From Magallana gigas (taxonomy: Eukaryota), in the NCBI RefSeq assembly GCF_963853765.1, contig NC_088857.1:56544001-56608000 (forward strand): a stretch of 64,000 nucleotides of DNA, written 5' to 3'. Positions within the stretch are counted from its first letter, which is position 1. Each line of letters starts with the position of its first letter. The notes below the pieces were generated by a model. It saw only the letters and a list, made by a program, of their open reading frames with translations. It was not told the origin of the DNA and did no database searches. The position numbers and the translations under genes were made by a program. Below, in pieces: positions 179-36,249 of the stretch.

Positions 179-3100
179 GTGCATACCATAGTATGCTGTT
201 TCAACCATGAATGCAGAAGAATGCAAAAGAATGCCACGGACGCGCCTATGTATCAGGGCACCCTCGGTCTCACCGGTAACTTCTATGAATAGACTATGTG
301 AAAATTACAGCTGATGCTATCTCTTGATTTTGAGTACAATATGAAGAAATAAATCTATAATACTCTTATTTTTTTTATAACATTGCGGTATTTCAGGAGA
401 AGTAACCACTTTGTTTACAACAACAACAACAACAACGGTGACGACGTTTACAACAACAATGTACAACATGGGGCAGAGTAAGGTTTAGTATGCAAGTCTT
501 ACATGTAACAACAGTCTGTCTCCTTCTGTCTGTTTGTCAGTCTGTCTGCCTGTCTCTTTCAGTCCGTCTGTCTGTCTGTCTCCTTCTGTCTGTTTTTCAA
601 TCTGTCTGCCTCTGTCTGTCGGCCTCTCTCTTTAAGCATGCAAGGTCTTTTTATTATTAGCCTGGTTTTAATGCTATTGTCTCTCATGCTTATATAGCAA
701 AAATATATTACATGACAGAATCTACTAAGTCTTATTAATCAGTTTCTTTTGCCACGCATGCTCCATAACTTCACTCGGCGTTTTACTGGTTCCTTATTCA
801 AAGTTTTAGCAGTAAAAAATAAATACATGTAGACAACTTAATGCAAATTTAAAATAAGCTTTATAAATACTAAATTTTTCACAAAATACCTAGTATCTTA
901 AATTCAAAAACCACCTCAATTAAAAATTTTTTTAATAAACATTTTATTACCTGAAGTTCAACTCTGCGAATGATAGATAACAGTCAGCTAATGATGTAGA
1001 TATATATTGTAATAAAAGCTAGCACAGCAAAAAAAAAAGCTCGTCTAAGCATACGAAATCTCCGTGCATCGAATTCAGTATGTGTACCCATTTATACAAT
1101 TTAACATGCATGCTACTCGATTGCGAAAGGGTTTTAAACTGCTTAATCCGATTTTATATCAAATTTTTATGAAACTTTAAACGATGATTATGCTAAGTAT
1201 GTGTATAATAATAAACATTGCAGTAGTTTTCCCGGTCAATTTAGCCAAATTTTAATGAAAAAACGATGTACAATTTTTTTTTTGCAAAACAAACGACATA
1301 AAAATTGTAGTGTGTTATTTCGCATCATATTAAAAACCGCACCTGATGTCGAGGCAGGAATGATTATATTATGACTTCTTCATCGTTTTTAGTAGGTCTA
1401 AATATGAGTGATGCTCTGGCAAATTAAAAATAAACCTAACAGTGTGTACTTTTTGTTCACTATGAATTTGAAGTTTGTTTTCTGTACAATCGATGCATAA
1501 AATGCGGGTTGAATGCACTCAATCATTTGGGGGACAAAACCAAACGGTGTCCTTTCCTAAACATTTCCTTTTTTTTTTAAAATTTTGTTGTTTTTTTCTT
1601 TGTATGCCAATACAAAGTAATTTTTTTATTCACTTTTGATACTTACAACTTTGAATCGAGACCAATTCTGCTGGTGTAAATGTGCAAATGTTTATAACTC
1701 TCTTAGAGAATTGGTTTGTATGGAAAGTTATTTGATAATGTAATAGACAAAAAATTCGGACTATGCGGATTTAAATGTTATAGCGTAGCACTTTGACCCA
1801 TAAGATGTATATTTATTCTTGAAAACTAAACTGTTGAAAGAAGGTTTCATGGATACACAGTGTTTCAATCCATGTTTCAGACAATATTACATTCATTATC
1901 TAGGTGTGACACAGTAGTTTGTTAGGCATTGTATATGTATGTTTCTGATGGCATTTTGTTAAACACTGTATTTGCATTTCAGACTGGCAGTTCTTACATG
2001 TACAGAGTGTGTGACATAGTATTTTGTTTAGCACTGTATTTGTATTTCAGACTGGCAGTTTTTTTACATGTACAGAGTGTGTGACATAGTATTTTGTTTA
2101 GCACTGTATTTGTATTTCAGACTGGCAGTTTTTACATGTACAGAGTGTGTGACATAGTATTTTGTTTAGCACTGTATTTGTATTTCAGACTGGCAGTTCT
2201 TACATGTACAGAGTGTGTGACATAGTATTTTGTTTAGCACTGTATTTGTATTTCAGACTGGCAGTTTTTACATTTACAGAGTGTGTGACATAGTATTTTG
2301 TTTAGCACTGTACATGTATTTGTATTTCAGACTGGCAGTTTTTACATGTACAGAGTGTGTTACATAGTATTTTGTTTTGTATGTTTCAGAATATGACGAG
2401 GGGGTGCTACATCTCGTGGCTGTCATCTCCAGTGTTGTGGTATTCGTGGGGCTAGTGCTCGCCATCAAGTCTATCGTCGGTTTCCTCAACAGACTCAACA
2501 GAAGAGAAGGGGACCTGCGTGGTATGGCATACAATTCAAGTAGTAGCCCGTATACACAAGATCCATTGTGCTGAATAAAGTAGCATACATTTACTAGTAG
2601 AAATATTCAAAGAGGTATTTTAATATTTGCTTCGGTGACAGAACAAAAATAAAGTTCGACTCAAAGGGACTGCATATAAAGGCTATTTTTAAATAATTGG
2701 ATTTTAGTTATAGTAACAAACCTTGTAATTTGTGAATAGCATACACCTAGCTTTATTAATTAGGAATAATTTATTGAATGAATTATATTGTTTTCTTTGG
2801 TATCAGATAACACCCGACCTAGCTCTTCGTTTCTCCAGTGGTTAAGAGACGAACCCCCGCCATATCCCGGTAAATATTCCCGGACTAACGTGAATTACCT
2901 CCCCTCGTATCTGTCCGCGATCGAGATGGAACAGGAACGACAACGGCAGGAAACGGCGACAATGAGTCAGCCGGCGCGTGATTTACCGGAAGTGAGCAGT
3001 GAGAGTAGCGTCATAATGTTTACTGCTCCAGAAGATGGCGTCGTCTGTCTGAAAGATTCCAGAAATTCAGATTCTCAAACATTTAGTCAGAGTAGAGTGA

Positions 3101-3255
3101 ACGAAACCAGCACAACTGTTGAAAATGTTATCAACGAGGTCTTGATAGCGAACCAAAGAGACGAGGGAGACGTACAGTTAGAGGAGAACAGGTTACGAGC
3201 ACCCACCGCCATGGATATTACTCCAGCAGTTGACAGCCGTGTGACTTTGGATTGA
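179..3255 (+). CDS. PY-motif single-pass membrane protein, paralog A (5' end probably outside the window). Exons 179-275 (tentative), 397-477, 2390-2521, 2807-3255
   Basis: All introns are GT-AG with compatible phases. Spliced reading: Thr-rich stalk (GEVTTLFTTTTTTTVTTFTTT), TM (VLHLVAVISSVVVFVGLVLAI), then a cytoplasmic tail with DEPPPYPGKYSRTNVNYLPSYLSAIEM. Homologous to paralogs B and C. The first exon is less certain. Confidence 0.8.
512..630. repeat. Imperfect (TCTG)n microsatellite
   Basis: Runs of tctgtctgtc and variants in an intron of paralog A. Confidence 0.8.
1905..2389. repeat. Minisatellite, ~68-bp unit, 6 full copies plus degenerate ends, abutting the acceptor of the paralog A TM exon
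   Basis: Unit acatgtacagagtgtgtgacatagtattttgtttagcactgtatttgtatttcagactggcagtt(t). The 'ttcag' ends at 1982, 2050, 2120, 2188, 2256 and 2330. Confidence 0.92.
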
Positions 3256-3991
3256 GACAAAAAGTAGTTGTAGGAACATTTAACACAACTGTGATACAAT
3301 TAGAAAAGAATCTTATTGGTACGATTGTTTCGGTTGCGTGCACAAAGGTAGTGATTGTCATGAATGTATGCAGGTTATAAAAACTGACGCCGAATGATGG
3401 TGTGTTGATATTGTGACGTCACATACGTACCTTACAATGTTTTTGCACCTATTTTCACACTCCAGGTGCCATACATTCGATTCCGAACACTATGTATTTA
3501 TCTGCGTATGTATTTGTGTATGTATTCATTTATCTTAGTTTTTACATATGTTTTTACATAAATTATCCAAAGTGATTAAGCCAGTGGGTAATTGTTTTTT
3601 ATGACCTTCTTTCTGACGCCACAGAATACATGCTAATGAAGAGGTTGTCCATTATGAGATAGTGTTTGTATATCATACCTCTTGTTGCTATCGAATCCTT
3701 GTTATGTTTTGTTATTGTACAATTTGTTGGTACAATTGATGATCTATATGGTGTAAATATAGCTTCTGTTTTGTGCAAGGACTCTAATATGAAGCTAATC
3801 ATTGATTACAATTTTCAATACACCATGTTTGGATTTATTTCTTATTCAAAACGTGAGAGATGTTTGTTTGGAAGACCTCGATTGGTCACTTAGTTGCAGC
3901 ATTAACCTCTTTCTAAATTCTTTTACATACACAAACAACGGAACTTTCTTTCTTGGCAGAATGTGGTTTATGGTTTGAATAGTATTTTTTT

Positions 3992-4480
3992 CTTACCTGG
4001 GCCAGAAGTTCAAGAAAGTTTTTACAAAATGTTTACGTTGTCGGTCATCGTCGTCGACAAAATCGTTGCCGTTGCAAGCTTTTCACACTTTTGACTTTCA
4101 AACCAATGGACCAATATTAATCAAACTTAGCACCTAACATCGTTAGGTGAAATAGATTCATTTTTTTTTTAAATAAAGGGTCATGCCCTCTTTTAATGTG
4201 AGATGATGAAGAATTATTAAATATTTTAAAATCATGATAGAAATAGAGAAATAAGTCTCATACCAAAGAACTGAAATTTATGTGGAAGCATCCTCAGGTA
4301 GTTTTAATTTAAGTTTGGTTAAACCATGATCTCAAGAGGAAGGGTGAAAACCAAACGGAGTGTTGATAATCTCTTCAAATAAGGACAGAAAGACTGAAAC
4401 TTGTAGTATTAGTGTAGATTCAAGTTTGTTCAAATCTTGATCCCCAGGGATATGATGAGGCCCCAATGAGGGTTGAGCGG
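3992..4480 (+). mobile_element. Degenerate Helentron-type non-autonomous element (HINE-like) fragment
   Basis: Decayed similarity to the 29621-30746 element (ttacctg...tcaag, gtc-rich microsatellite, ttttcacactttt, ccaat..taatcaaactt). Confidence 0.45.
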
Positions 4481-5463
4481 TTAGGTTTTTTTCCCCAAAC
4501 ACTAAAACAATTAAAGCGACTGTTTAACATTTATATAAAATAAGCGAAGAAAATTGAAAATAATTCTTACAAAAATATGCTCTACTTATATAATTAAATT
4601 CATATTAAATGCATGCAACATAAAATTAATTTGACCAGAATTATGGCCTTCGTTGCTTTTATGATTTTCAATTTTTCCATTTGCAATATATTCATGCTTA
4701 ATTAACTTATAATTCTATTGGTCATCCAAACGATTAACTATATTTATCAAGTCAAAAGCAAAAAATAAAGCTAAGAATTTTTGTTACGTAATCAAGAGCC
4801 GTTTTGAGGTTTTTGTTTACATCTAGGTTGGTGAATAGAAAAACGTGTATTAAACAAATTAAGTGACAGCTCTAGAAACTAAAATTATGTTCATAAAAGG
4901 CTTCCAGATATAAAAAAGAATCTGACGAAAACAAAGAGTACATGTGTGTCTACAAAAACATGACTCTAGCTTCATTACTTGACAACTGGCCTTAAATTTT
5001 TGCTGAACATATGAAATTCGTAAGGGAAGCATCGTTAACATTAACAATTTAAAAAATATATATATGTCTTGTTTTGAGGGTATAAGTACGGATTCTCTCT
5101 ATAGTTTCCGGCGACTTACAACCTCCTTTTGACCTGTTTTGGTCCGAGAGGACAGAAATCCGTACTGAATTACACTATTGTTAGAACCTCGATGGTAACC
5201 ATTCACAAAATATCGCTTGGCGGTTGTATTGATATTGTTGTTAACCTTAAAAACACGGTTGTGTCAATAATTCTGTACGATTTGCCTTTCTCAACGGAAA
5301 ATATATTTAAAAACCAGCAATGTTAAAAAGTTCACCAGGATATAAAATTAGGTTGGTACGTACGTGATCAAATAATCTGAAAAAAACATCCGGCTTATCG
5401 ATATTTGATCACGTGAATGACCAAGTTCACATCCCGATGAACTTTTGAACATGGTGGTTATTA

Positions 5464-5779
5464 TATACAATATATACCATTTTATACAAATATACAATAT
5501 ATACCATTTTATACAAATATACAATATATACCATTTTATACAAATATACCATATATACCATTTTATACAAATATACAATATATACCATTTTATACAAATA
5601 TACCATATATACCATTTTATACAAATATACAATATATACCATTTTATACAAATATACAATATATACCATTTTATACAAATATACCATATATACCATTTTA
5701 TACAAATATACAATATATACCATTTTATACAAATATACAATATATACCATTTATACAAATATACAATATATACCATTTT
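5464..5779. repeat. 27-bp minisatellite (tatacaatatataccattttatacaaa), ~11.5 copies
   Basis: Near-perfect tandem array; it accounts for the three spurious repeat ORFs (MVYIVYLYK, IYNIYHFIQ). Confidence 0.95.
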
Positions 5780-6440
5780 GTATCGTCTCCTTATACATTA
5801 ACTACACAAAATTATTCACAATGAAATTTTGATCCGTGATAGTATAGAGAGAAAAAGATTGCCTTACTAGTGGTTTTAATCGCTTGATTTAGAGAAAAAA
5901 AAACACCTTATGATCAGTTAAAACCACCATCTTACATCAAAATTTAAATTTAAAGTGCATGTATTGAAATACGGTAAAATATTTAGAAGTAGACGTATAA
6001 ATAGTGGGAATATCCCTTAAACAGCTTTGAGCTATATCATAGTTTACATAATGTATGAAAAAAAAAATATACAACGAAACACCAGAAACACACTGAGCTA
6101 CTGTCTATTCAGTGTGAACCACTTTTATTATTTAAAAAACAACTTTGTTATGTTATGTAACAAACACGGAAGTTTACTATTAAGTTCATTTTTTGGATAC
6201 AATGACCTTACACACACCATGAGCTGACAGTTAACAGAGTAAAACAAGTATATAACAAGTATGTGTTTGGGACAAACAATCGAAGTGGAACGGCCGAATT
6301 AGACAGATAACGATAACAAAGAACGCCATTACCAACGTTTCTCTGTGCAGAGATTGATTTAGAAATGGACAATTGACTGGAGAAGTGATTTACCTGAGGT
6401 TTACGCGGGAGGAATGTCAATAAACTGCACCTATAGGTGA

Positions 6441-8547
6441 ATGGTAAGTTTCTTGCTGAAAAACCAAGTGATTTTAAGTTTTATTAACTTATATTAATCG
6501 ATAGTTTCTAAGTGTATGGTGAGCATATTAAAATATAAACTTAATGTATAGTTGTCATTGTCTCTTAACAATAAGACAGGAGATTTTGGATCTGCAAGAC
6601 ATTCCATGTTCTAAGGGATCATGTTCACCAATAAACCATTCATCGATTCATGAATACGTAATGTAATTTAGGGCAAGATTCATCCATGGTTTGATGTGCA
6701 TTATGCATTGTCAGAAATATATATATTCCAAATGCACTAGAATCAACAAGGTGTTTCTGACTTATCTAATATGGACAGTTATGCACACACACATACATAT
6801 ATACGATCGTGTGTGCGACAATGAACATTGACAACATCTACTTTATTTACAGCAATGTCGACAAGTTCCCAACCATAAACAGTTTTATGTTTTTACAGGT
6901 GGTGTACCCACAGATGGCCACTAACACTACAGGTAAGGTAAATCTAGGTCAGGAAGGTAAACCTTCATACTATAATTGTGTTTTACATGTTTATGCTCTC
7001 ATTAAAAACATATGAAAATTTAATGAGAAATCTCTGTCACACATGTCATACAGAACTGATGGAGAGTTCATCAAAGTTCGTTTTATTTATGCAGATGAAG
7101 AAATCCATTTACCCTCACCTACAAGCGAAAAAGGTAAATGTTTAAAATCATTTAATTCAATTTTTGTTAAGAAAAGCAAAATATCTTAATTAATAACAAT
7201 ATCAACCGGACAAGAACGCAAAATACCTAAAGCAAACGATTAAAGAAAAGGAAGAATATGTCATCTAAACACCTTGATGTAAAACGCAATGTACATGCAT
7301 GTACAGGTATATAGATAGAGTTTTAAAAAGTTCGCACCTTTACCTACAATAGCATGATAGCTTTACAACAGTTGCAGAGTTTTGATGCATGTATGTGATA
7401 AAGATCCATTATTGTGCATACAAAACCTGTCCTCAGGCACGTAGCAACAGACGGGAGGACAGTGGCCCAGATCCTCCACTCTTTAAGAATATGCTCCATT
7501 TAGTAAGAAAGTATATTTACTATAGTTAACATATAATCTTACTGTCTTCCCAATTTTGTTGGTCCCTGCACTTTGTAAAGCGATGCTCTGGGCCTGTTTT
7601 AAAGTAAACACTTTAAGTGGACGTACAGTTGAACAGTTCACTAAGTTTGTTGAGTACTGTAGTGTACTATTGATGAGATAAGATGAGATAAGATGTCCAG
7701 GGCTGCCATCTGTATATATCAGTCTTTTAGCGAGATAACCCATTCTAAATATGGGTGTGGGTCAATTTAAACAGAACAATACGAAAATGTCCGTATTCCC
7801 CTCTGGTTATCTTTTGAGTAGCATGATGACATAGAAGAATTGTTATCCTATATTTGATTAATATGTTGAAAATAGAATTTAGACAAAGAAACTGCAACTA
7901 ACTACGATGGATGCTCTTCCACCAGCTTCTTATTTTTTTTCAGTATGAAAATCGAATAAATAGATGCCTATTTCATTTGATAAAGTTTCTATAAAAATAC
8001 CGATCGGACGACGGTTACCGAGAAAGTCACATGTAACAGTTACTTTCAAAATTTGTTCGTAAATATATGTAACACTGTTTCATCAAATACTTTTAAAAAT
8101 GAATGTTATAACATTCAAGGTTCTGATATAGTTATGGCATAAGGATTGTAAGAAGAGTATTTATTCTATATAAGAATGATACCCTTTATCATAGCAATGA
8201 AATAAGTGACTAAAGGAGATTCTTAAATAGATATAAACTTTGGACATATCTCCATTCGATTTACCGCATAAAGAGCAAAGTAATGACTGTATCGTGCACC
8301 TCTCAACCAAAGACACCTGACGTTACATATTTTCCTCATTTTAAAATAATATACCGCTTACCGTTTATTACAAGAAAAATGTTTGTGCTCTGAACCCTCG
8401 CGGAAAGGTGAACAAACTTGACAAAGTGAAAGAGAAAAATACTTATCAACTTTGGTTTTACAAGTACCGGTGTTGTAACCGTTGCCAATGGATACTGGTA
8501 ATGTACCAGTTATCGGCTAAAGTTTGACGTTTTCTTTTCGTAATTCC

Positions 8548-8583
<36 letters not shown>

Positions 8584-11500
8584 AGTGAGTGTAGTGTTTT
8601 TTCTTTCTTTCTTTCTTTCTTATTATTTTTTTTTCTCCTTTTTTGTCGGCAGAATTTCTCAGAGATGTCTTGATAGATTTTCTTCAAATTTTTAGGGATG
8701 ATTGCAAATGATAATATCTCGAGGCGTTTTTTTCATTTTTTCAAAATTCATTTCCGGTCGTCCGTTTCCTGTCCCGCGTCAAAAAACCTTGTTCCCTCGA
8801 GATCTCAGAATCGGCAAACACTTGAACATCTAAACTTTGTGGAATGATATACCTATAGTTGTAGATGTGTTTAAACTATTTTGTTTTGTTCGTCGTAACT
8901 TCCGGTCGTCACCGGAAGCACTTCAAAAATAATTATTTTTACGCATTAAATTCCTTTTCCAAATAATAAATATATAAGTATAAATCTATACATAGATTAT
9001 CCATGCGATGTTATATCAACAAAATAATTTTACTTCCAGTGAGATATCTCAATTATCTCAGGTATTTTTTTTAAAACACATTTTGTTCCCAAGAGGTCTC
9101 AGAGACTATAAGTGATATAAGCACGAAACTTTCAGGGATGATAGACATTTGATTGAAGATGTGTTTAACCGGTTTCATTTAATCTTCCGTCACTTCCGGT
9201 CCACACAGGAAGAGTTCGAACAAATCGAGCTGTTTATCAGTTTAACTTTATTCCTTTGATATTTGTAGTGTGCTCGATGAACAATAATTTACAAAAGGCA
9301 AGTATACAAGATATATTGAATACAATTTACATTGAGCACTTCCGTTTGTCCGTTTCCTGTCCCGAGACAAAAACCTTATTTCGACGAGATCTCAAAAACG
9401 GTAACGACTTGAACAACCAAACTTTGTAGAATGATACACCTATGTATGTACATGTGTTAACACTATATTGTTATGTCCGGCGTAACTTCTGGTCGTCACA
9501 GGAAGTACACTTTATTTTGATTTTTTAATAATAATTTGCTTATTTAGCATGGAAGTAACATTTAATCATTAGAATTACAAAAGGTCATCTACACAGAATC
9601 ATCTATCCGATGATTAATAAACAAAAAACTACTTCCGGTGAGATATCTCCAATATCTCAGGTAGTCTTTTTAAAACAAATATTGTAACAGCGAGATCTCA
9701 AAAACTATAAGCGATCAAAGCACGAAACTTTCATGGATGATAGACATTTAATTGAAGATGTATTTAACCAGTTTCATTTTGTTTTCCGTCACTTCCGGTC
9801 CACACAGGAAGAGTTCAAACAAATCGAGCTGTTGATCAGCTTCACTGTTTTTCTTTGATATTTGTAGTTACAGCGATGAACAATAGTGTACAAAAGGCAA
9901 CTATACAAGAAATATTGAATACAATTTACATTTAGCACTTCCGTTTGTCCGTTTCCTGTCCCGAGACAAACAACTTTAATCCAACGATATCTCAAAAACG
10001 GTAAAGATTTGAACAATCAAACTTTGTGAGATAATAGACCTATGTATGTACATGTGTTAACACTATTTTGTTTTATCCGACGTAACTTCCGGTCGTCACA
10101 GGAAGTAAACCGAATTTTCATATTTTACAAATATTTTGGTTATTTAGCATGGAAATAATTATTTAGCAATAGAAATATAAAATGTCATTTACACATGGTA
10201 AAAAAAACAAAAAAGTTTTACTTCCGGTGAGACATTTCAAATACCTTAGGTAGCCTTTTATAAAAAACAAAGTACTTGCAAGATCTCAGAAACTGTGAGA
10301 GATCAAGCCATAAAACTTATATGGATGATGGACATTTGATTGAACATGTGTTTAACGGGTTTCATATGGCCATACGTCACTTCCGTTTCTCAATCGAAGC
10401 GTTCAAGCAATAGAATTTCTTTTTTAACTTTAGATTTTTTTAAAATAACATTTTAGTCAGTGTGATGAACAGTCACGTACCGTAGGTTAATGTTAGGATA
10501 TTAAAACTAAGAAAAACGTAAACATCCAAACTTTGAGGAAAGACAAAACAATGTATGAATATATCGTTTGCTATGTTCTAAATGATTCGTCGTAACTTCC
10601 GGTCGTCAAAGAAAGTACTCAAAAATTGACATTCAGTCTTTTTTGTTTTGTTTAACTTAGAAAAAATTTATTGGGTATTCCTTTAGAGTATATATTGTAT
10701 CCATTTTCTTTTAAAAGAGAAATTGAATTTTTTGTACCGATTAAGACATGAGGAACGGAAGACCTTTTTGTTGCTATAGCAACAAGAGTCTAGTTTCTTG
10801 ATATTTTTGAATAGAACTTGACATAGTTTAAATGGTGAACTCCTTATTTATCCATCTGTTAAATTATATCATTATTTAGAACTCAAAACATCTTGTTTTT
10901 GGTTTTTTTATCACGTCCGAATTTGCCGAGTTTTTACGATCTACTTTACCAGTTTTCAGCTTCGTGACAATAACATTGTAAAATCCCCTGGATATGTCGA
11001 TTTTGTACTTTGCAAAATGTAATTTGAATTATGCAAAATATCTCAAAACACAAGAATTATAATTTTTTTAACCACCCTTATTTGTCTCCCAGTGACCACC
11101 AGACCCAGCTCGGCGCTGATGGAGGACCCAGTCTTTTTGGCCATCACAGGTGTGATTCTCTGCTTTGGGATTATCTTTCTTCTGAGAACGGTTGTTAATC
11201 AAATCAAAAACCGACGGTCTCGACACCACCGTCACAGAAGTCCAGGTAAATCAACAAATGGCCACGGTTAAGTTTTTTTATGTAGAAGAAAATAAGTAAA
11301 TTCAACACGAATACATTTACACAAATTTACATTTATGACACTTCATGTATACATACTATACTATAAGTAATAATATTATTGTGATAATAACTAATACGCA
11401 CCTTTGTCTCTGTGTTTTATAGATCCGCAAAGAATCTCCCGAAATGTCCCCTCCAGGACCTCATTTATAGACGATCCCCCACCCTACCCCGGGAAATATT

Positions 11501-11916
11501 CTAAAACCAACATCAATTACCTCCCCTCCTATGACTCGGCCATAAAAATGGCACCCGAGTTGCTCATGTGCAATATTGATGAGATGAATCAGTCTATAAA
11601 TTTTCCCGTGCTGCATGAAAACACAGAGGACAATAGTGGGAATATCAGTGACCATGAAATCAGAGGAGACGGGGAGTTGTGCAACATGGACCAGTTTGTC
11701 CCTGTGTCGTTAGACCCCGGGAATGTAAGAGGAAACAGAAGCTCGGAACACTTCGATACCTCTCTCGATGATGAGCTGGACTATTCAGCAACAAATGTTA
11801 ACGATTCTAGAGAAGAAGCAGTTACAAATGTCTGTCAGCAATTAGATGCTGAGGGAGACACGAGGGGTGATACCTTAAATGTGGCTTCTTCTGTAAATAT
11901 AGAAAACAGTGGATAA
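6441..11916 (+). CDS. PY-motif single-pass membrane protein, paralog B (~240 aa). Exons 6441-6443 (ATG only, tentative), 6899-6932, 7095-7133, 11093-11245, 11423-11916
   Basis: Phase-compatible GT-AG exons total 723 nt. Reading: M-VVYPQMATNTT-DEEIHLPSPTSEK-VTTRPSSALMEDPVFLAITGVILCFGIIFLLRTVVNQIKNRR..., with DDPPPYPGKYSKTNINYLPSYDSAIKM in the last exon. The last two exons are strongly supported by paralogy; the 5' small exons are moderately supported. Confidence 0.78.
8549..10794 (+). mobile_element. Helentron-type non-autonomous element (HINE) with ~595-bp internal tandem units, in an intron of paralog B
   Basis: 5' hairpin taaggtcttccgtt-tcc-aacggaagacctta (8552-8582), (TTCT)n just inside, three diverged ~595-bp units (ccgtttcctgtcccg near 8763, 9350 and 9950), 3' subterminal aacggaagacct (10754-10765), palindrome ttgttgctatagcaacaa (10768-10785), ctagtt end. 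This matches the established HINE layout. Confidence 0.8.
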
Positions 11917-14822
11917 TTATGTCTTAATTTATTTAATTGGTATTTTAATATTGATCTCTGGTCGATAAAAAGTCGTGATTTCATTAGAAAAAATTCTTTG
12001 TTTTGAGAATTTCATCATGTAACTACATCAGTGGAGTTTATGTTGTTCTGGTTTGAAATATTAAGATTGAATGAGGAATCAGAAAGACGATAACCAAAAG
12101 CTTTTTGTTGACAAACTGAAAATGTTTAACGTTGCTGACATTAAATAAACATCCTCAGTCATGTTGAGTATACTGTTTATATGTATCATCAAATTGTTAC
12201 AAATAAAATGCATGAACATGTATTTTAGTAACAAAATTGACATTTTTATTTTATATATGTACATTACTTATTGACAGAATACTCCGTAAACAAACAGCTT
12301 CATATCTCAAAGACACGTTAAACCTTGTTGCCACACAGATTATTGTGGGTTTTTTCTAAAACCGTAATAAATTGATGCATGGAGCCGGTTTCAGTTTCTT
12401 AAATATCAAGTTTATTTTATGCCAAACAGGTGTTAGTAACTTTAAAGTATTAAGTAAGTAGGTGATTGATGACTGTTATATTCAAAATTCTGCGATTGAA
12501 TAACTGTTTTGAATCAGATCAAAAACTTAGAATTATTCTTTAAAATATATTTTAATCGTCAATTTTGTTATTAAAATATATATCGAAAAGTTATCATTTT
12601 CAGCCGACACCTTGGAGCTATAAGTTCATTTATAAAATTGTTTTTTTTATGTATGCATGATTCAAATATATTATACTATAAGTTAATTTCTGGACATTGC
12701 TGCATTACATTTTTTATGTACAATACTTGAACACATTTACTTTTGAATACTTTTATGTGTTATCACGCTGTACTGTTCTGTTCTGTTCTGTTCTGTCGAT
12801 GTACAAGTTACTTACTCACCCCTGCGAATGTGTTCGGAAAGTTTTCTTTATCGTTGCTAAGTATGTAATAAATCCAGTGGTGATCGAATGAAAGTTCACG
12901 AGACTTCCCCGAGAATTGTCCTGTGAAATTTCGAGCGGAAGTATAAGTGTTCGAATAATATTCTTAAAATACGTAAGTACTGGTCGTTTTTCACATCCTA
13001 TCCTACTTTGATTTATGTTAAAACATGAAAATCTTTTAAGATGTATGTCTTATCTCACCATCTAGCGGTTATTTATATCAAACGATGATATTCAGAACAG
13101 AGTTATCGTTCGTGTTAAACCACGTGTATATTGGTTAAAATATAAGCATTGGGTTGCTTAATAAAATCATAGCCATGTTTGATACTTGTGGTGTGCAATA
13201 TTAGTTTTTAAAAAAATAATGGGTGTCTGTTTTGCATAAAATCTTAGTATATCAAGCCATTTTCAAGGAACATACTGCATAAAATAGTATAGTCTGTTTC
13301 ACTATTGATGATATTACTAGTTCAGACGCGGATCGAAAACTAATTCTCAGGGGGATCTCTACATAGCATGTTAATTGTTGCAACAACAGACAAAAACTAT
13401 TTTTTGTATTGTCACATTTAATTCTAGAACACATTTTATCCATCAATTAATGAAGATAAAGTTTAAAATCAAGAAACCTCTAGATTTTTAAATTTGACTA
13501 CAAGTATCTAGATTCTATGAAATAGACTATAAACACGAGGCACGATTTTTACTGCGAAACTGAAAGGGTCAATTAAAACCAAGTGGTCTTAAATTTAAAT
13601 GACAATAACATTCGCAGGGGTGTTACTATTCAGGCATATTTCACGTTATTTGAGGAGAATTAAAATATCTGCAGTTATATATTGCGTGTATTTCTACAAG
13701 GTTTGCAACCGTTAGTTATTTTATATGATTAACTACATTTGTACAATCGTGTTTAACATGATTTTGAAAAAAAAATTGTTTTATTTGCTTATTCATGCTG
13801 GCATGGTGGTAGCCAACAATGCAGAAAATACATAGTCTACATATAAAAATCCGCATGAGTGCTTCTGAATTTGTTTGATTATAGGTTTGTTTGTTTGTTT
13901 GAAAAGTACACGGTTGGCTTAACACAGAAGCGTCTGATCTGATAATGTCGCAGCACTTACAGTTATTACTTATGTAACAAATGGTCGGGTTTTGGGTTCA
14001 GATAATTTTTATATCATACGGGTGTTATCTTTGATGCTAATGGTAATATGCGAGGATCGTCCGGATGTACTAGTATATATGAGACCACACTCGAGAGAAG
14101 AGCTGATTCTGTGTTCGGCTGTCAATGGAGTAGGTACGTTAATACGACTGCACAGTGTTCGTATTGGGTTTAATCTTTAAATAAAGCGATAATATTTCAT
14201 CATATTTTATTGACTGAGTGTACCTGGCTGCAGCTTGTGTCGGCTGCAGGGATACAGCCCTGTACATATGATAAGGGCATAGAGCTTTATCAGGTCTCGA
14301 GGCTGAGACCTGTGCCTCGGATAGAGCTCCGGGTTATAACCCACTGATCATCAAGCCCCATCCTTTTTTAATAATTTGTGAATTATTTGTTTTGCATGCT
14401 TAAGGATAGGCCATCATTGCAACTATATCTGTATATATTGACTCGTAATTTTTGTGATAATTTCATGCGGTATTCATGTATGATTATTAAATAGACACTT
14501 TCCCCAGACTGGTCTTAATCACCGAACCCAAAACACGTTACACTGTGTTTAATATATGTCATCGTGAATTGTTCAGAACATTTATTCTGTGTAGTCAGGG
14601 AAAGAAAATATTTACCAATTTTTTTTGGCATTTATTTTTTTACGTCTACACTATCTCAGATAAGGCGTGAATTGCCTTATCTGTCGTGCATTTAGTAGGT
14701 TATTTGCATAGTTTTAGCTAGTTCGGTCATCGGTGCGGAACGACGTCAACAACTTCAAACAGCGAGTGAAACCAGGTGTTAAACACGGGTGATATCCTTA
14801 GAAATTATTCCTCTGTGGACCT

Positions 14823-16901
14823 ATGGACTTTTCAGGTAGCGACCATTTCGTAAAATTTTGGTTTTTTATGTTGGTGATGATTCATTTAAATCATTTGTAT
14901 ACACTGTCAGGTAAGTTAGTTTCGATTTCTATTTTGGGACATATTTATATGAAAAATTCCCAAGGAAATTCAAATGACTTCAAAGACAACAACAACGCAT
15001 TCCAACAACATTAAAAGCGGAGATAGCAACAATAATAAGGAAAACCAATAAAAGAAAACAACAACAACAGGAAAGACAACATTGGTACAATCACAAAACA
15101 CGAACGAAACATTACGAGAATTTCGACATTTTCCATAAAAGGGCAATGGCAAAGATGATTAGAGTATAATAAAAATCAAATTATAAGTTAGATACTTAAA
15201 CACATTTTTGCGACTAGTGAATTTTTAACCTATGTTAATAAAAGAAGTTGATGCAAAAAAGTATTTATGCATTTGCATAATTAACAAAAAAATGCAAATG
15301 GGGCCACTTATAATTGCAGCAGTGCGGATCCTGACAAAAGCATATTGATGATGCCTTAATTATGCGTCCGTTCGTTGAATAATACACAATGGTGAACAAC
15401 ATTTCAGACGTAGGTATGATGATTTTGATTATCAAATGACAAGTTTTAAAGCCATTGGATTATTATCGGTATAGATATTTTGGTCATCTACTCCTGGAGG
15501 CTGGAGAAGTGATGCCTGTGTCTCTGTTTATGTTTTCAGATCATCTTCTGTCACACTTTCATTCCGAGGTCATTCACGCTAATGACACTAGCCGAGAAAG
15601 AAAACAGCGACCCGTGACCAGTAAGTATGGAAGTACTCAAGTTTTATCTTAAAATTGTTTGGGATGTTTTTACAAAAAATCAAAATCATAAAAAAATATC
15701 GCAGATCTACTCAACCGCAAAAACATCGATTTCTCCGGATCTGAAGAAATGACAAGTCTATTAGGAAATCTTTTTTTTTTCATTACATCGAAAGTACTTT
15801 ATTGATGTGTATAACTATTGAATCTAAAAATTGTCAAAGGTGACGAAAACGAGAACAATGGACAGTACAGTCAGTCAGGTGTTTTGCTTATTAATAATCT
15901 TAATCTAACAAACAAATCTCAAACAGGACCCGAGTTACATTCAAATTCAGATTTTAGAATGTTATTAGGGGAAAATATTCGGAATTTTACTTTGAAAAAA
16001 CCCAACAAACTTAATGATCTTAATACAAGCATAGACTAACTAAATGTGTGTGAAACGTTTTATTTGAGCAGACTCCCATTGGTACCGAGGGTACGTGATG
16101 GAAGACCCAGTGGTTCTAGCCATCCTCGGGGTAATAGCTGTCATCATTGTGGCCACCATTTTAAGGACGATCGTCAACAAAATCCTTGCTCGCCGACAGA
16201 ATACACGTAAGTCTTGCTCATGAATGTATATCTGTTCGATTACTTTACTACGTCAAAAGTTCGGTAAGAAGCATTAATCCATGTTTCTTATTACAAAATT
16301 TAGTATATTGTTTTGTTGGGACAACAAAAACTGTCCTTTCCATATAACATGTTACCATCACTGACATAACTTCACGCACCGGTAACGAACACACACAAAA
16401 AAAAGAACAGCCGGTAAAAGCAAGCTCTCCCCAGAGGTTGACTGATGTTGATTGATATCAGGGTTTTTTCTTTATTCTCTAGCGGAGCGGTCCGTGTCGA
16501 CGTGTTCCTACCAACTCAGGGATCCGCCCCCTCCTTACCCCGGGAAAAACCCCGAGGCCGTCTCTGATTACCTCCCTTCTTACGAATCAGCTGTCGCGAT
16601 GGAACGGCGGCGACAAGAGGCCCGGGAGGGGGAGAGCATGACAGAGTGCGCCAGCCGTGTGTCCGTGGATTTCTCCATTTCTAGTGACCATTTGGATGTT
16701 TTAAGGAATGATAGCAGCGAACAAATGAGTCGCGAGTCCACTAGTGCTGATAGAAATAGACCGGTTACTGTGGTTTCAGAGTGGACAATCAGTCCGCACA
16801 GTAGTAGGACAGAGAACACGGAGTGTGCACACGTGCAGAATGAAGAGTTGACCAGCGCGTGCATGTCACAAACCAACGGGACAGAAATTAGTGGGTTATA
16901 A
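14823..16901 (+). CDS. PY-motif single-pass membrane protein, paralog C (240 aa, complete). Exons 14823-14910, 15540-15620, 16072-16206, 16483-16901
   Basis: Four exons joined by phase-1 GT-AG introns, 723 nt total. Signal-peptide-like first exon (MDFSGSDHFVKFWFFMLVMIHLNHLYTLS), short ectodomain with an NDT sequon, MEDP then TM (VVLAILGVIAVIIVATIL), tail with DPPPPYPGKNPEAVSDYLPSYESAVAM. Confidence 0.85.
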
Positions 16902-17108
16902 CATCCAATTGGTTATCGTTGCAGTTATATAATTCATGACTTATGTACCTTTAAATTGATTTGTATAATTATTATTCAAGGAGATAAGAAATGGGAATTT
17001 AATCATATCCACATACATTCTGCCATTAACCATTTATATTTTGCTTTTCTTTTCTACAGCAAATAAGTCATGATATTAGTGAAACAAACATAACATCCCT
17101 ATGTTGTA

Positions 17109-23700: not shown

Positions 23701-24045
23701 CAAAATCAACCATTTCAGGGCAATTATCACACACATCAAGAACCCCGTCCAACACACATACACAACTTTCAACAGCGTTATCTGCTACTTTAAATTCTTC
23801 TATTGTTTTGTCATCAATATCTTCATTAACGTCCTCCTCATTGTCATCAACATCATCCTCACTGTCATCTATTTATTCTTTTGAACAAACTCAACCAGTG
23901 CCAACAACAGAGGCGCCCTGGTCACTGTCTTATCCTGAGATTATTGGAAGTAGTATAGGTAAGCTCATCCAACATCCGGAATAATTTGAATCAAAACGGC
24001 AAAAAAAATTGTTGATTGCGATTGGTTGATATTTAAAACAGAAAA

Positions 24046-24081
<36 letters not shown>

Positions 24082-36117: not shown

Positions 36118-36249
36118 NNNNNNNNNNNNNNNNNNNNNNNNNNNNNNNNNNNNNNNNNNNNNNNNNNNNNNNNNNNNNNNNNNNNNNNNNNNNNNNNNNN
36201 NNNNNNNNNNNNNNNNNNNNNNNNNNNNNNNNNNNNNNNNNNNNNNNNN
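36118..36249. other. Assembly gap (132 N)
   Basis: Run of N about 60 bp downstream of the stop codon of the secreted coiled-coil gene. Confidence 1.

What the first reader, a model, noticed from the sequence alone, without database searches (positions are those of the whole stretch)
179..16901. Three tandem membrane proteins with a fixed double PY motif (PPPYPGK-x8-LPSY): candidate Nedd4-family adaptors
Seen: the three cytoplasmic tails are unalignable except for PPPYPGK, exactly 8 residues ending in Tyr, then LPSYxSA(I/V)xM. Established: PPxY and LPxY motifs bind the WW domains of Nedd4-type HECT ligases. From memory, vertebrate PRRG4 and Drosophila Commissureless use an LPSY plus a PPxY motif to down-regulate surface receptors, and PRRG4 has them in the opposite order (LPSYEQA...PPPPYPG). 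Inference: a lineage-specific expanded family of Commissureless/PRRG-like sorting adaptors, with motif spacing tuned to tandem WW domains and differing ectodomains that may select different cargo.
Basis: partly seen in the sequence, partly recalled or inferred. Interest (0 to 1): 0.76.

Follow-up and report, generated by a model that had tools for sequence, protein, structure and literature searches.

The report
Oyster-only double PY-motif membrane proteins
Three neighbouring Pacific oyster genes encode small single-pass membrane proteins in which nearly everything evolves fast except a 25-residue tail block carrying two ubiquitin-ligase docking motifs, so they most likely recruit Nedd4-type ligases as fly Commissureless does, but this is untested and kinship to any named family is unproven.

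Summary
Three expressed, spliced, same-strand genes in Magallana gigas encode proteins of 238, 234 and 219 aa. Each has a start Met-x-x-Asn-x-Ser/Thr, no signal peptide, a short Cys-free ectodomain, one TM helix and a disordered tail. The tail carries PPPYPGK-x7-Y-LPSY-x-SA. RefSeq calls all three "uncharacterized".

The trio, plus the FN3/CUB gene downstream, keeps its order in Saccostrea echinata. A fourth, dispersed subfamily exists. An exhaustive profile search of 1.84 billion proteins found 24 clusters. Every named one is an oyster (Ostreidae).

The cassette is 64-100% identical with no indels, while all other regions are 12-59% identical with many indels. Synonymous sites inside it have diverged. 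The spacing is 11 residues in 105 of 106 sequences. One gene 3 variant has a 3-residue deletion.

The cassette pairs a Pro(+1) PY motif with a Comm/PRRG4-style LPSY[DE]xA-hydrophobic motif that starts a predicted helix.

Best reading (0.6): membrane-tethered adaptors or activators of Nedd4-family HECT ligases.

No membership holds. Pfam Comm is sub-threshold and seen only in the fourth subfamily. There is no Gla domain, no Cys-rich domain and no Ndfip topology.

The scan had not noted this family before.

The parts
179..275 (+). Gene 1, first exon in the window. It runs from the acceptor at 177-178 through 5'UTR to the ATG at 221. It encodes MQKNATDAPMYQGTLGLT, with an N-glycosylation sequon at residue 4.
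   Evidence: The model is identical over 238/238 residues to P0112 (XP_019918878.3).
397..477 (+). Gene 1 exon 2. It encodes a Thr-rich, mucin-like stalk of the ectodomain.
2390..2521 (+). Gene 1 transmembrane exon (YDEG-VLHLVAVISSVVVFVGLVLAI-KSIVGFLNRLNRRE), flanked by phase-1 introns.
   Evidence: AlphaFold2 predicts a helix over residues 49-86 with pLDDT about 90.
2807..3255 (+). Gene 1 last exon: juxtamembrane linker, PY cassette and disordered tail, with the stop codon at 3253-3255.
2848..2928 (+). Gene 1 double-PY cassette, DEPPPYPGKYSRTNVNYLPSYLSAIEM.
   Evidence: A predicted helix starts at the LPSY tyrosine, residues 124-140.
6914..6932 (+). Gene 2 start exon, encoding MATNTT with a sequon at residue 4.
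   Evidence: Matches transcript-derived P0016 and P0129.
7095..7133 (+). Gene 2 exon 2, encoding DEEIHLPSPTSEK.
   Evidence: The loose end of RNA contigs at 11091 matches 7102-7131. Also.
11093..11245 (+). Gene 2 transmembrane exon, encoding ...MEDPVFLAITGVILCFGIIFLL-RTVVNQIKNRRSRHHRHRSP.
   Evidence: An RNA joint from 11243/11245 to 11421/11423 appears in 4 runs. Also.
11423..11916 (+). Gene 2 last exon. The cassette lies at 11470-11550 (DDPPPYPGKYSKTNINYLPSYDSAIKM). The 3'UTR runs on to about 12.6-12.9 kb.
14619..14835 (+). Gene 3 5'UTR exon. Its 5' end is not defined.
   Evidence: RNA contigs, and a joint from 14835 to 15320 in 3 runs.
15320..15413 (+). Gene 3 exon holding the ATG at 15389 (MVNNISDV, sequon at residue 4). 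An alternative donor at 15409 shifts the frame.
15540..15620 (+). Gene 3 ectodomain exon.
   Evidence: RNA joints from 15413 to 15540 and from 15620 to 16072.
16072..16206 (+). Gene 3 transmembrane exon, encoding ...YVMEDPVVLAILGVIAVIIVATIL-RTIVNKILARRQNT.
16483..16901 (+). Gene 3 last exon. The cassette lies at 16521-16601 (DPPPPYPGKNPEAVSDYLPSYESAVAM). The stop codon is at 16899-16901.
   Evidence: The full model is identical to P0126.

Best explanation
The three genes encode small single-pass membrane proteins with the N-terminus outside and no signal peptide (type III). Their cytoplasmic tails display a rigid two-motif docking cassette for WW domains. The first motif is PPPY-P, a PY motif with Pro at +1. 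Fifteen residues separate its Tyr from the Tyr of the second motif, Y-LPSY-[DE]-S-A-[IVLM]. The second motif continues into a helix, the form that Nedd4 WW3-type domains bind with high affinity.

Because it is held at the membrane, the cassette most likely engages two WW domains of one Nedd4-family HECT ligase. That would release the ligase's auto-inhibition. The protein itself, and membrane proteins associated with it through the TM or juxtamembrane region, would then be ubiquitinated and sent to late endosomes or lysosomes. This is the Commissureless/Ndfip/PRRG4 way of working.

Shown here: gene structure, expression and splicing, predicted topology features, strong purifying selection confined to the cassette, restriction to oysters, and conserved tandem arrangement.

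Inferred: WW binding, the identity of the partner, ligase activation, any cargo, and the endosomal destination.
For: Motifs and topology:
- Exactly two PY-type motifs occur per protein, both on the cytoplasmic side. Two to five K/R residues lie in the 12 residues after the predicted 21-residue TM window, acidic residues precede it, and an N-x-S/T sequon sits at residue 4.

Selection:
- The cassette is 64-100% identical with zero indels between orthologs and paralogs. Ectodomain, TM, juxtamembrane region and tail are 12-59% identical with many indels.
- Genes 1 and 2 differ at 10 synonymous codons within the 27-codon cassette, so conservation reflects selection and not recent gene conversion.
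- Spacing is 11 residues in 18 of 18 full-length proteins and in 105 of 106 sequences gathered.
- In the gene 3 clade the linker sequence changed (YSKTNVNY in Saccostrea; NPEAVSDY, HHETSFNY and THETTSNY elsewhere) while its length and final Tyr were kept.

Structure prediction:
- AlphaFold2 predicts only a TM helix and a helix starting at the LPSY tyrosine.

Literature:
- A helical turn after Tyr, with nonpolar residues at +3/+4, is the NEDD4 WW3 'type 1' binding mode. Pro at +1 defines 'type 2' (PMC11565833).
- Comm's PPCY and LPSY recruit Nedd4 to Robo1 (PMC12101832).
- PRRG4's LPSY is its main NEDD4/NEDD4L site (PMC3764795).
- Multiple PY motifs and membrane tethering are needed to activate these ligases (PMC5892558 and PMC12720080).

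Other leads:
- Nearest protein-language-model neighbours are all small PY-motif membrane proteins: Comm, BEAN1, TMEM52B, MLANA, WBP1L and LDLRAD4.
Against: - There is no binding, localisation or ubiquitination data for any member.
- PY motifs also bind non-ligase WW proteins. PRRG4 binds YAP, TAZ and MAGI-1/3.
- No cargo is known, and the ectodomains are too short and variable to suggest one.
- One gene 3 variant (P0008, Logan contig, 2 member sequences) has a 3-residue deletion in the linker, so the spacing is not absolute. Alternatively that variant is an assembly error or a defective allele.
- Comm spaces the motifs by 5 residues and PRRG4 by 14 in the opposite order. Function therefore does not obviously demand 11.
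- Atlas feature hits are leads only. The recognition score for P0006 was below the tool's reliability mark.
Confidence: 0.6

Rival explanations
1. The cassette docks WW proteins that are not ligases, such as Yorkie/YAP, TAZ-like, MAGI, Kibra or WWOX. The proteins would then act as membrane scaffolds or sinks in Hippo or junctional signalling, and not as degradation adaptors.
For: PRRG4's LPSY and PPPY bind YAP1/2, TAZ, MAGI-1 and MAGI-3 (PMC3764795). Pro at +1, as in PPPY-P, was the residue most favoured by YAP WW1 in type 2 peptides (PMC11565833). Two motifs at a fixed distance would suit a tandem-WW partner.
Against: The LPSY[DE]xA-hydrophobic form is the one characterised for Nedd4 WW3-type binding (Comm, PRRG4), and aliphatic +3/+4 residues fit NEDD4 WW3 preferences. 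Most known small PY-motif membrane proteins work with Nedd4-family ligases. The two readings do not exclude each other.
Confidence: 0.15
2. The proteins are merely substrates. On this reading they are short-lived glycosylated surface proteins, and the PY motifs only set their own turnover. Their real function would lie in the rapidly evolving ectodomain or tail, with no adaptor role for other proteins.
For: Ectodomains carry a conserved N-terminal sequon, and in gene 1 a Thr-rich mucin-like stalk. Comm and Ndfip1 are themselves degraded in a PY-dependent way. No cargo-binding element has been identified.
Against: Nothing outside the cassette is well conserved, and TM identity is only 14-67%. 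It is therefore hard to place a function in the ectodomain or tail. A membrane-tethered double-PY array is what activates these ligases, so bystander ubiquitination of neighbours is expected.
Confidence: 0.15
3. The tyrosine-rich block (three or four Tyr in 20 residues) is a phosphotyrosine docking site for SH2 or PTB proteins, and the PY resemblance is incidental.
For: Three Tyr are invariant (PPPY, the Tyr before LPSY, and LPSY; a fourth, GKY, is lost in the gene 3 lineage). N-x-N-Y in genes 1 and 2 loosely recalls NxxY.
Against: No ITAM, ITIM, YxxPhi or pYxN pattern fits, by direct reading of the cassette. NxxY is lost in gene 3. The invariant prolines, the Leu and the +2/+3 Ser-Ala are explained by WW binding and not by SH2 binding.
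Confidence: 0.05

Closest known systems
Commissureless (Comm, Pfam PF15957), Drosophila and other insects
   Same: Both are single-pass, lack a signal peptide, have a Cys-free luminal N-terminus and a disordered cytoplasmic tail. Both have a PPxY motif upstream of LPSY. The extended second motif is LPSY-acidic-x-Ala-aliphatic: Comm GLPSYDEAL, oyster YLPSYDSAI. In both, the functional core is about 25 residues with very low conservation elsewhere (PMC5578492, PMC3655966, PMC12101832). The Comm model gives a sub-threshold colinear match from TM to PY in the fourth oyster subfamily.
   Different: Spacing is 5 residues in Comm (PPCY 220-223, LPSY 229-232) against 11 here. Comm is 370 aa according to my memory, and its TM lies mid-protein. 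The conserved N-terminal ITFEIP motif is absent. The Pfam score is 15-16 bits against a cut-off of 27, and there is no hit at all for the three window genes. The literature states that Comm is confined to insects (PMC8045725). No link to Robo is known here.
PRRG4 / PRRG2 (vertebrate proline-rich Gla proteins)
   Same: Both are single-pass with a cytoplasmic LPSY plus PPPY. PRRG4's GLPSYEQAV matches gene 3's YLPSYESAV closely. PRRG4's LPSY is the main NEDD4/NEDD4L/YAP site (PMC3764795).
   Different: The order is reversed: LPSY 186-189 comes before PPPY 204-207, with 14 residues between. PRRG proteins have an N-terminal Gla domain. The oyster proteins have none: there is no Pfam Gla hit and no Cys in the ectodomain.
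Ndfip1 / Ndfip2 (Nedd4-family interacting proteins)
   Same: They are membrane-tethered multi-PY adaptors that both recruit and activate Nedd4-family ligases. Their PY region is reported to be 60% similar to Comm's 25-residue core (PMC6913780).
   Different: By my own knowledge, Ndfips have three TM helices and an N-terminal cytoplasmic PY region with three motifs. Here there is one TM helix, the PY region lies C-terminal to it, and there are two motifs.
Small vertebrate PY-motif single-pass proteins: BEAN1, TMEM52B, MLANA, PRR7/WBP1L
   Same: They share the overall plan of a short N-out segment, one TM helix, a basic juxtamembrane stretch and PY motifs. They are the nearest neighbours by protein-language-model features.
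   Different: No sequence-level match was found. Their Pfam models (BEAN1_helical, TMEM52, MLANA, WBP-1) give no hit. They are found mostly in chordates.
Shisa-like 'STMC6' adaptors (Shisa, WBP1/VOPP1, CYYR1, TMEM92) and PMEPA1/LDLRAD4
   Same: They have a TM helix plus a PY-rich cytoplasmic tail, and several down-regulate receptors.
   Different: They are defined by a Cys-rich ectodomain (PMC5578492, citing Pei and Grishin), or for PMEPA1 by a PPNR Smad-interaction motif. The oyster ectodomains hold zero Cys and no PPNR. The only hit is CYYR1 at E = 0.1 in one ortholog.
Yeast Rcr1 / Rcr2 (Pfam PF12273)
   Same: They are small single-pass proteins with two PY-type motifs that bind Rsp5 (PMC5578492).
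   Different: Only one ortholog gives a chance-level hit, at E = 0.21. The motifs differ: PPSY and VPEY.

Membership tests
Commissureless (PF15957) | Match to the Pfam Comm model above its gathering score of 27 bits. | tested here: not met
   Genes 1-3 and their orthologs give no hit at E <= 10. The fourth subfamily scores 15.9 and 15.3 bits (E = 0.015 and 0.025), colinear over TM to PY.
Commissureless (PF15957) | Single TM helix, no signal peptide, Cys-free luminal N-terminus. | tested here: met
   There is one hydrophobic segment. The second-best 19-residue window scores <= 0.91 on the Kyte-Doolittle scale. The ectodomains hold zero Cys. AlphaFold2 predicts a single TM helix.
Commissureless (PF15957) | A PPxY motif followed by the extended LPSY-acidic-x-Ala-aliphatic motif in a sorting core of about 25 residues. 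| tested here: met
   The order and the extended motif are present in all members. The spacing differs: 11 residues here against 5 in Comm.
Commissureless (PF15957) | Conserved N-terminal ITFEIP motif (PMC5578492). | tested here: not met
   A regex search finds none in any member.
Commissureless (PF15957) | Binds and down-regulates Robo receptors. | not testable with these tools
   This needs cell or in vivo assays.
PRRG (Gla, PF00594) | N-terminal gamma-carboxyglutamate (Gla) domain. | tested here: not met
   No Gla hit appears in Pfam scans of 15 members at E <= 10. Ectodomains are 16-57 aa with no Cys and 1-4 Glu.
PRRG (Gla, PF00594) | LPxY precedes PPxY in the tail. | tested here: not met
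   The order is reversed in all oyster members.
Ndfip1/2 | Three TM helices with an N-terminal cytoplasmic PY region. | tested here: not met
   There is a single TM helix and the PY cassette lies C-terminal to it.
Shisa-like STMC6 (Shisa, WBP1/VOPP1, CYYR1, TMEM92) | Cys-rich ectodomain with a C*C*CC*CC-type pattern. | tested here: not met
   The ectodomains hold zero Cys. There is no WBP-1 or Shisa Pfam hit. CYYR1 gives E = 0.1 in one ortholog only.
PMEPA1 / LDLRAD4 | Match to PMEPA1_helical (PF27646), and a PPNR Smad-interaction motif. | tested here: not met
   There is no Pfam hit and no PPNR.
Functional class: PY-motif adaptors of Nedd4-family ligases | Cytoplasmic [LP]PxY motifs that bind WW domains. 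| tested here: inconclusive
   The motifs are present, cytoplasmic by predicted topology, and under strong constraint. Binding itself cannot be tested with these tools.

The most novel reading that the evidence does not exclude
The oyster family may be a true, highly diverged homolog of Commissureless. In that case Comm-type sorting adaptors (no signal peptide, one TM helix, PPxY followed by LPSY-acidic-x-Ala-aliphatic) would predate the split of insects and molluscs and would not be an insect invention. The oyster genes would then give a non-insect handle on Comm-like receptor sorting. The conserved FN3/CUB receptor gene next door would be a first cargo candidate.
Probability: 0.15. Interest if true: 0.65.

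Novelty: new variant of a known kind. Interest (0 to 1): 0.45.

Why it matters
Membrane-tethered PY-motif adaptors decide which surface receptors Nedd4-family ligases remove. Examples are Comm and Ndfip for Robo, and Ndfip for DMT1 and Jak1. Comm is repeatedly described as confined to insects.

This oyster-only family has no Pfam model and no name in RefSeq. It shows the same logic reduced to a frozen 25-residue cassette in an otherwise fast-evolving protein.

The cassette combines two mechanistically different PY motif types at a fixed distance. It is therefore a natural test case for how motif type, order and spacing control WW-HECT ligase recruitment and activation.

It also adds four uncharacterised genes to the candidate regulators of receptor turnover in a commercially important bivalve.

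Whether the resemblance to Comm comes from descent or from convergence is open, and either answer would be informative.

Tried and rejected
1. My first gene models were wrong in two places. I took MSYRTDGEF at 7043 as the gene 2 start, and I gave gene 1 three coding exons. Transcript-derived proteins corrected both: the start is MATNTT at 6914, and there is an extra Thr-rich exon at 397-477.

2. I considered the CCFNHEC stretch at 179-220 as a degenerate Gla-like or Cys motif. I rejected it because it lies upstream of the ATG at 221, in the 5'UTR of the RefSeq-identical model.

3. Pfam scans of 15 members at E <= 10 gave nothing above threshold. PDB sequence searches with one protein and with the profile returned only TM-helix noise.

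4. Three word-index protein searches returned only oyster sequences.

5. I looked for other sorting or signalling motifs: ITAM/ITIM, YxxPhi, dileucine, PPNR and ITFEIP. None fits or is conserved (PPNR and ITFEIP by regex; the others by direct reading of the sequences).

6. A look-up of Saccostrea isoform P0027 found no record. P0032 and P0052 worked instead.

7. The cluster column is not reliable for naming. XP_011421108 ('WSC4-like') turned out to be a TSP1/mucin neighbour and not the PY protein. It is fused to the fourth paralog only in UniProt model A0A8W8NLY9. K1PV11 (898 aa, 'CUB domain-containing protein') starts with gene 1 and carries its cassette, and I read it as an old fused model.

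8. I could not obtain Comm or PRRG sequences through the tools, so no profile-profile comparison was run. Only the motif positions could be checked.

9. Literature searches for the gene identifiers found nothing. A search combining Commissureless with mollusc, annelid and oyster terms listed no paper holding 'commissureless' among its top 15 rows.

Full report
**What is in the sequence**

A six-frame scan finds three occurrences of PPPYPGK + 8 residues ending in Tyr + LPSY-x-SA-(I/V)-x-M. All are on the + strand, with PPPY at 2854, 11476 and 16527. The window has 33% G+C and one N run at 36118-36249, which I did not touch. Sequencing runs holding the stretch include one labelled 'oyster metagenome'; most others carry coded organism names. 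My final models for genes 1 and 3 are identical to RefSeq proteins of Magallana (Crassostrea) gigas that are named 'uncharacterized protein'.

**Gene models**

- Each motif lies in a last exon, preceded about 180-290 bp upstream by an exon encoding a transmembrane segment.
- I laid RNA contigs and reads of four runs on 10950-16949. They gave GT..AG joints 11245>11423 (gene 2), and 14835>15320, 15413>15540, 15620>16072 and 16206>16483 (gene 3).
- Transcript-derived proteins from the protein searches fixed the remaining exons.
- Gene 1 CDS: 221-275 | 397-477 | 2390-2521 | 2807-3255, 238 aa, 238/238 identical to XP_019918878.3.
- Gene 2 CDS: 6914-6932 | 7095-7133 | 11093-11245 | 11423-11916, 234 aa, 230/234 identical to XP_011413720.1.
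- Gene 3 CDS: 15389-15413 | 15540-15620 | 16072-16206 | 16483-16901, 219 aa, identical to P0126, which one search lists as XP_065939839.1.
- All three genes have four coding exons joined by phase-1 introns, so they are paralogs from tandem duplication.

**Protein anatomy**

- All three proteins begin Met-x-x-Asn-x-Ser/Thr (MQKNAT, MATNTT, MVNNIS).
- None has an N-terminal hydrophobic signal.
- The N-terminal segment is about 31-50 residues with no Cys. In gene 1 it holds a Thr-rich stalk.
- An invariant Asp lies just before the single TM helix, and two to five basic residues lie in the 12 residues that follow the predicted 21-residue TM window.
- This predicts an N-out, C-in (type III) topology with a glycosylated N-terminus.
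- AlphaFold2, run on the family alignment, predicts only two ordered elements in gene 1. One is the TM helix at 49-86 (pLDDT about 90). The other is a helix at 124-140 that begins at the tyrosine of LPSY (pLDDT about 72). The rest is disordered.

**Family and distribution**

- Word-index searches with the three last exons returned only oyster proteins. These were many transcript-derived Logan sequences plus 'uncharacterized' RefSeq proteins of Saccostrea echinata, Crassostrea virginica, Ostrea edulis and M. angulata.
- I built a 99-position profile covering TM, juxtamembrane region and cassette (A1). I scored it against all 1.84 billion representative proteins.
- That search gave 24 hits at E <= 0.001. 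All named ones are Ostreidae. The unnamed ones come from Logan, ENA or JGI and resemble the oyster sequences.
- The hits include a fourth, more divergent subfamily (P0054-P0056, P0058, P0060) with PPPYPGK[ML]SRTNINYLPSY[ND]SA. It is present in Ostrea and Saccostrea. In M. gigas it appears inside UniProt fusion model A0A8W8NLY9.
- The cassette alone scores up to 57 bits, so a similar cassette in another mollusc in the library would have been seen. More diverged relatives could be missed.

**Age and arrangement**

- In Saccostrea echinata the called genes run in this order on one strand: the 253-aa gene 1 ortholog, the 218-aa gene 2 ortholog, the 215-aa gene, then a 961-aa fn3/CUB protein.
- A maximum-likelihood tree puts a Saccostrea sequence in each of the gene 1, gene 2 and gene 3 clades. 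It puts Ostrea in the gene 3 clade (98/94), joins genes 2 and 3 (98/98), and places the fourth subfamily outside.
- The tree has long branches and is rooted at the midpoint only.
- The duplications therefore predate the Magallana-Saccostrea split. This is an old small family and not a recent expansion.

**Constraint**

- I compared each region separately between orthologs and between paralogs. The 25-residue cassette is 64-100% identical with no gap column.
- Ectodomain, TM, juxtamembrane region and tail are 12-59% identical (67% for the TM of one ortholog pair) with many gaps.
- Across 15 full-length proteins the invariant positions are the start Met, the Asp before the TM, PPPYPGK, one Thr, and Y-LPSY-x-SA. 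The window's own gene 3 has Ala at the Thr position.
- Within the 27 codons of the cassette, genes 1 and 2 share 12 identical codons, differ synonymously at 10 and non-synonymously at 5. Conservation is therefore due to selection on the protein and not to gene conversion.
- The distance from PPPY to LPSY is 11 residues in 18 of 18 full-length proteins and in 105 of 106 cassette-bearing sequences gathered.
- Gene 3's positional ortholog in Saccostrea has the linker YSKTNVNY. Magallana has NPEAVSDY, and other gene 3-clade sequences have TPETVSDY, THETTSNY and HHETSFNY. Each is 8 residues ending in Tyr.
- The single exception is P0008, a Logan contig product 96% identical to gene 3 with two member sequences. 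It has a 3-residue deletion, giving PGKNPSDYLPSY. It may be a real allele or an assembly error.

**How it most likely works**

- [LP]PxY motifs are the ligands of WW domains, above all those of Nedd4-family HECT ligases. This is established and is restated in PMC12101832, PMC3764795 and PMC12720080.
- A deep-mutational study distinguishes two kinds of PY peptide (PMC11565833). In 'type 1', a helical turn after the Tyr places nonpolar residues at +3/+4 into a pocket of NEDD4 WW3, with Ser/Thr favoured at -1. In 'type 2', Pro at +1 blocks the turn.
- The oyster cassette holds one of each in a fixed order. PPPY-P is type 2. L-P-S-Y-[DE]-S-A-[IVLM] is type 1, and the predicted helix from its Tyr fits this.
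- Comm's critical motif is GLPSYDEAL and PRRG4's is GLPSYEQAV (PMC5578492). The oyster motifs YLPSYDSAI, YLPSYESAV and YLPSYLSAI have the same form.
- In Comm both motifs act additively to recruit Nedd4 to Robo1 and to send both proteins to lysosomes.
- Ligases of this family are auto-inhibited. They are activated by several PY-WW contacts and by membrane tethering or clustering.
- I therefore read the oyster proteins as membrane-tethered adaptors or activators of Nedd4-family ligases, with confidence 0.6. All steps after 'the motifs are there and are under selection' are inference.

**Rivals**

- The same motifs could dock Yorkie/YAP, MAGI or Kibra-type WW proteins, as PRRG4 does. Confidence 0.15.
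- The proteins could be substrates only, with the cassette setting their own half-life. Confidence 0.15.
- The Tyr-rich block could be a phosphotyrosine docking site. No known pattern fits, and the invariant Pro, Leu, Ser and Ala are left unexplained. Confidence 0.05.

**Comparison with known families**

- Comm: the architecture, the motif order and the extended LPSY motif are the same. The spacing (5 against 11), the N-terminal ITFEIP motif and the Pfam score are not. PF15957 reaches only 15.9 and 15.3 bits against a cut-off of 27, and only in the fourth subfamily, although the match is colinear from TM to PY.
- With 15 proteins scanned, E-values of 0.015-0.025 are weak. The two hits are related proteins and so are not independent.
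- PRRG: there is no Gla domain and the motif order is reversed.
- Ndfip: the topology is wrong.
- Shisa-like, WBP1/VOPP1, CYYR1 and TMEM92: there is no Cys-rich ectodomain.
- PMEPA1/LDLRAD4: there is no model match and no PPNR.
- Protein-language-model neighbours are consistently small PY-motif membrane proteins: an unnamed arthropod cluster, Comm, BEAN1, TMEM52B, MLANA, WBP1L and LDLRAD4. This agrees on the kind but does not show kinship.
- The literature states that Comm orthologs are unknown outside insects (PMC8045725; PMC5578492).

That core is a lineage-specific family of Comm/PRRG-like candidate Nedd4 adaptors that is not a WBP1, PMEPA1 or TMEM92 ortholog.
- Three points are not supported: cargo choice by the ectodomains, 'unalignable' tails, and the word 'expanded'.

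**Novelty and score**

- This is an unnamed family without a Pfam model, and as far as can be seen it is restricted to oysters.
- It belongs functionally to a well-known kind but has its own rigid two-type PY cassette. I class it as a new variant of a known kind.
- Interest is 0.45. The case is solid and tidy, with a testable link to the question of whether Comm exists outside insects. The function rests on short linear motifs only.

**Limits**

- Only 10950-16949 could be laid on reads. Gene 1's splicing rests on RefSeq and Logan proteins.
- No Comm or PRRG sequences could be fetched, so no profile-profile test was run.
- Statements about Ndfip topology and Comm length come from my own knowledge.
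- No sequence was taken for human, and no N run was filled.

Noticed in passing
window 2995-3039 (gene 1), 11587-11631 (gene 2), 16656-16691 (gene 3): A second, weaker shared tail motif lies 20-30 residues after LPSY in these three genes. It is a short hydrophobic run with Phe or Met, flanked by Ser/acidic clusters: SSESSVIMFTAPEDG, NQSINFPVLHENTED, RVSVDFSISSDH. In orthologs it reads STVFSISSDSESS. It resembles a phospho-regulated SUMO-interaction or beta-strand motif. Its function is unknown.
   Followed up: partly
window 15409-15415: Gene 3 has two 5' splice donors 4 nt apart, at 15409 and 15413, both seen in RNA contigs. The minor one shifts the frame. Translation would then start at MEDP just before the TM helix, giving a 175-aa protein without the ectodomain.
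   Followed up: partly
window 17794-29062 and L001:12435-19147: The FN3/CUB receptor-like gene directly downstream of the trio lies in the same position and on the same strand in Saccostrea echinata (961 aa, fn3 + CUB). UniProt model K1PV11 (898 aa, 'CUB domain-containing protein') starts with gene 1 and carries its cassette, which I read as an old fused model. Linkage is conserved, and a functional link such as cargo is pure speculation.
   Followed up: partly
window 1953-2377: A 68-bp tandem repeat (6.1 copies, 94% matches) fills the end of gene 1's intron and runs to within 13 bp of the TM-exon acceptor. Each unit carries a TTTCAG acceptor-like site.
   Followed up: no
window 8677-10410: About three copies of a roughly 600-bp unit lie inside the long intron of gene 2. 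They were seen as repeated open frames at offsets of about 570-600 bp. The period is too long for the tandem-repeat finder's limit.
   Followed up: no
window 12750-13750: This stretch between genes 2 and 3 has 10-100 times higher contig depth in all RNA runs. Reads lie on both strands and many have loose ends at 12816-12817 and 13622-13625. It is probably a dispersed, transcribed repeat or transposable element.
   Followed up: no
window 18477-19307 and 20335-21207: Two segments of about 0.85 kb are 92-100% identical at the translated level, lie 1873 bp apart, and sit inside the neighbouring gene. The two stray LPSY hits of the motif scan fall in them.
   Followed up: no
window 5463-5779: A 27-bp AT-rich tandem repeat (11.8 copies, 97% matches) lies in the intergenic region between genes 1 and 2.
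   Followed up: no
P0008 (Logan contig product, allele of gene 3, equivalent to window 16545-16568): This is a variant of gene 3 with a 3-residue in-frame deletion in the PY linker (PGKNPSDY instead of PGKNPEAVSDY). It is the only one of 106 cassettes with a different spacing.
   Followed up: partly
P0066 (UniProt A0A8W8NLY9, M. gigas, elsewhere in the genome): The fourth subfamily's M. gigas copy is annotated only as the C-terminal part of a fusion model. The fused partner is a neighbouring TSP1-like/mucin gene, XP_011421108, auto-named 'cell wall integrity and stress response component 4-like'. One Logan isoform (P0054) has an N-terminal signal-peptide-like extension.
   Followed up: partly
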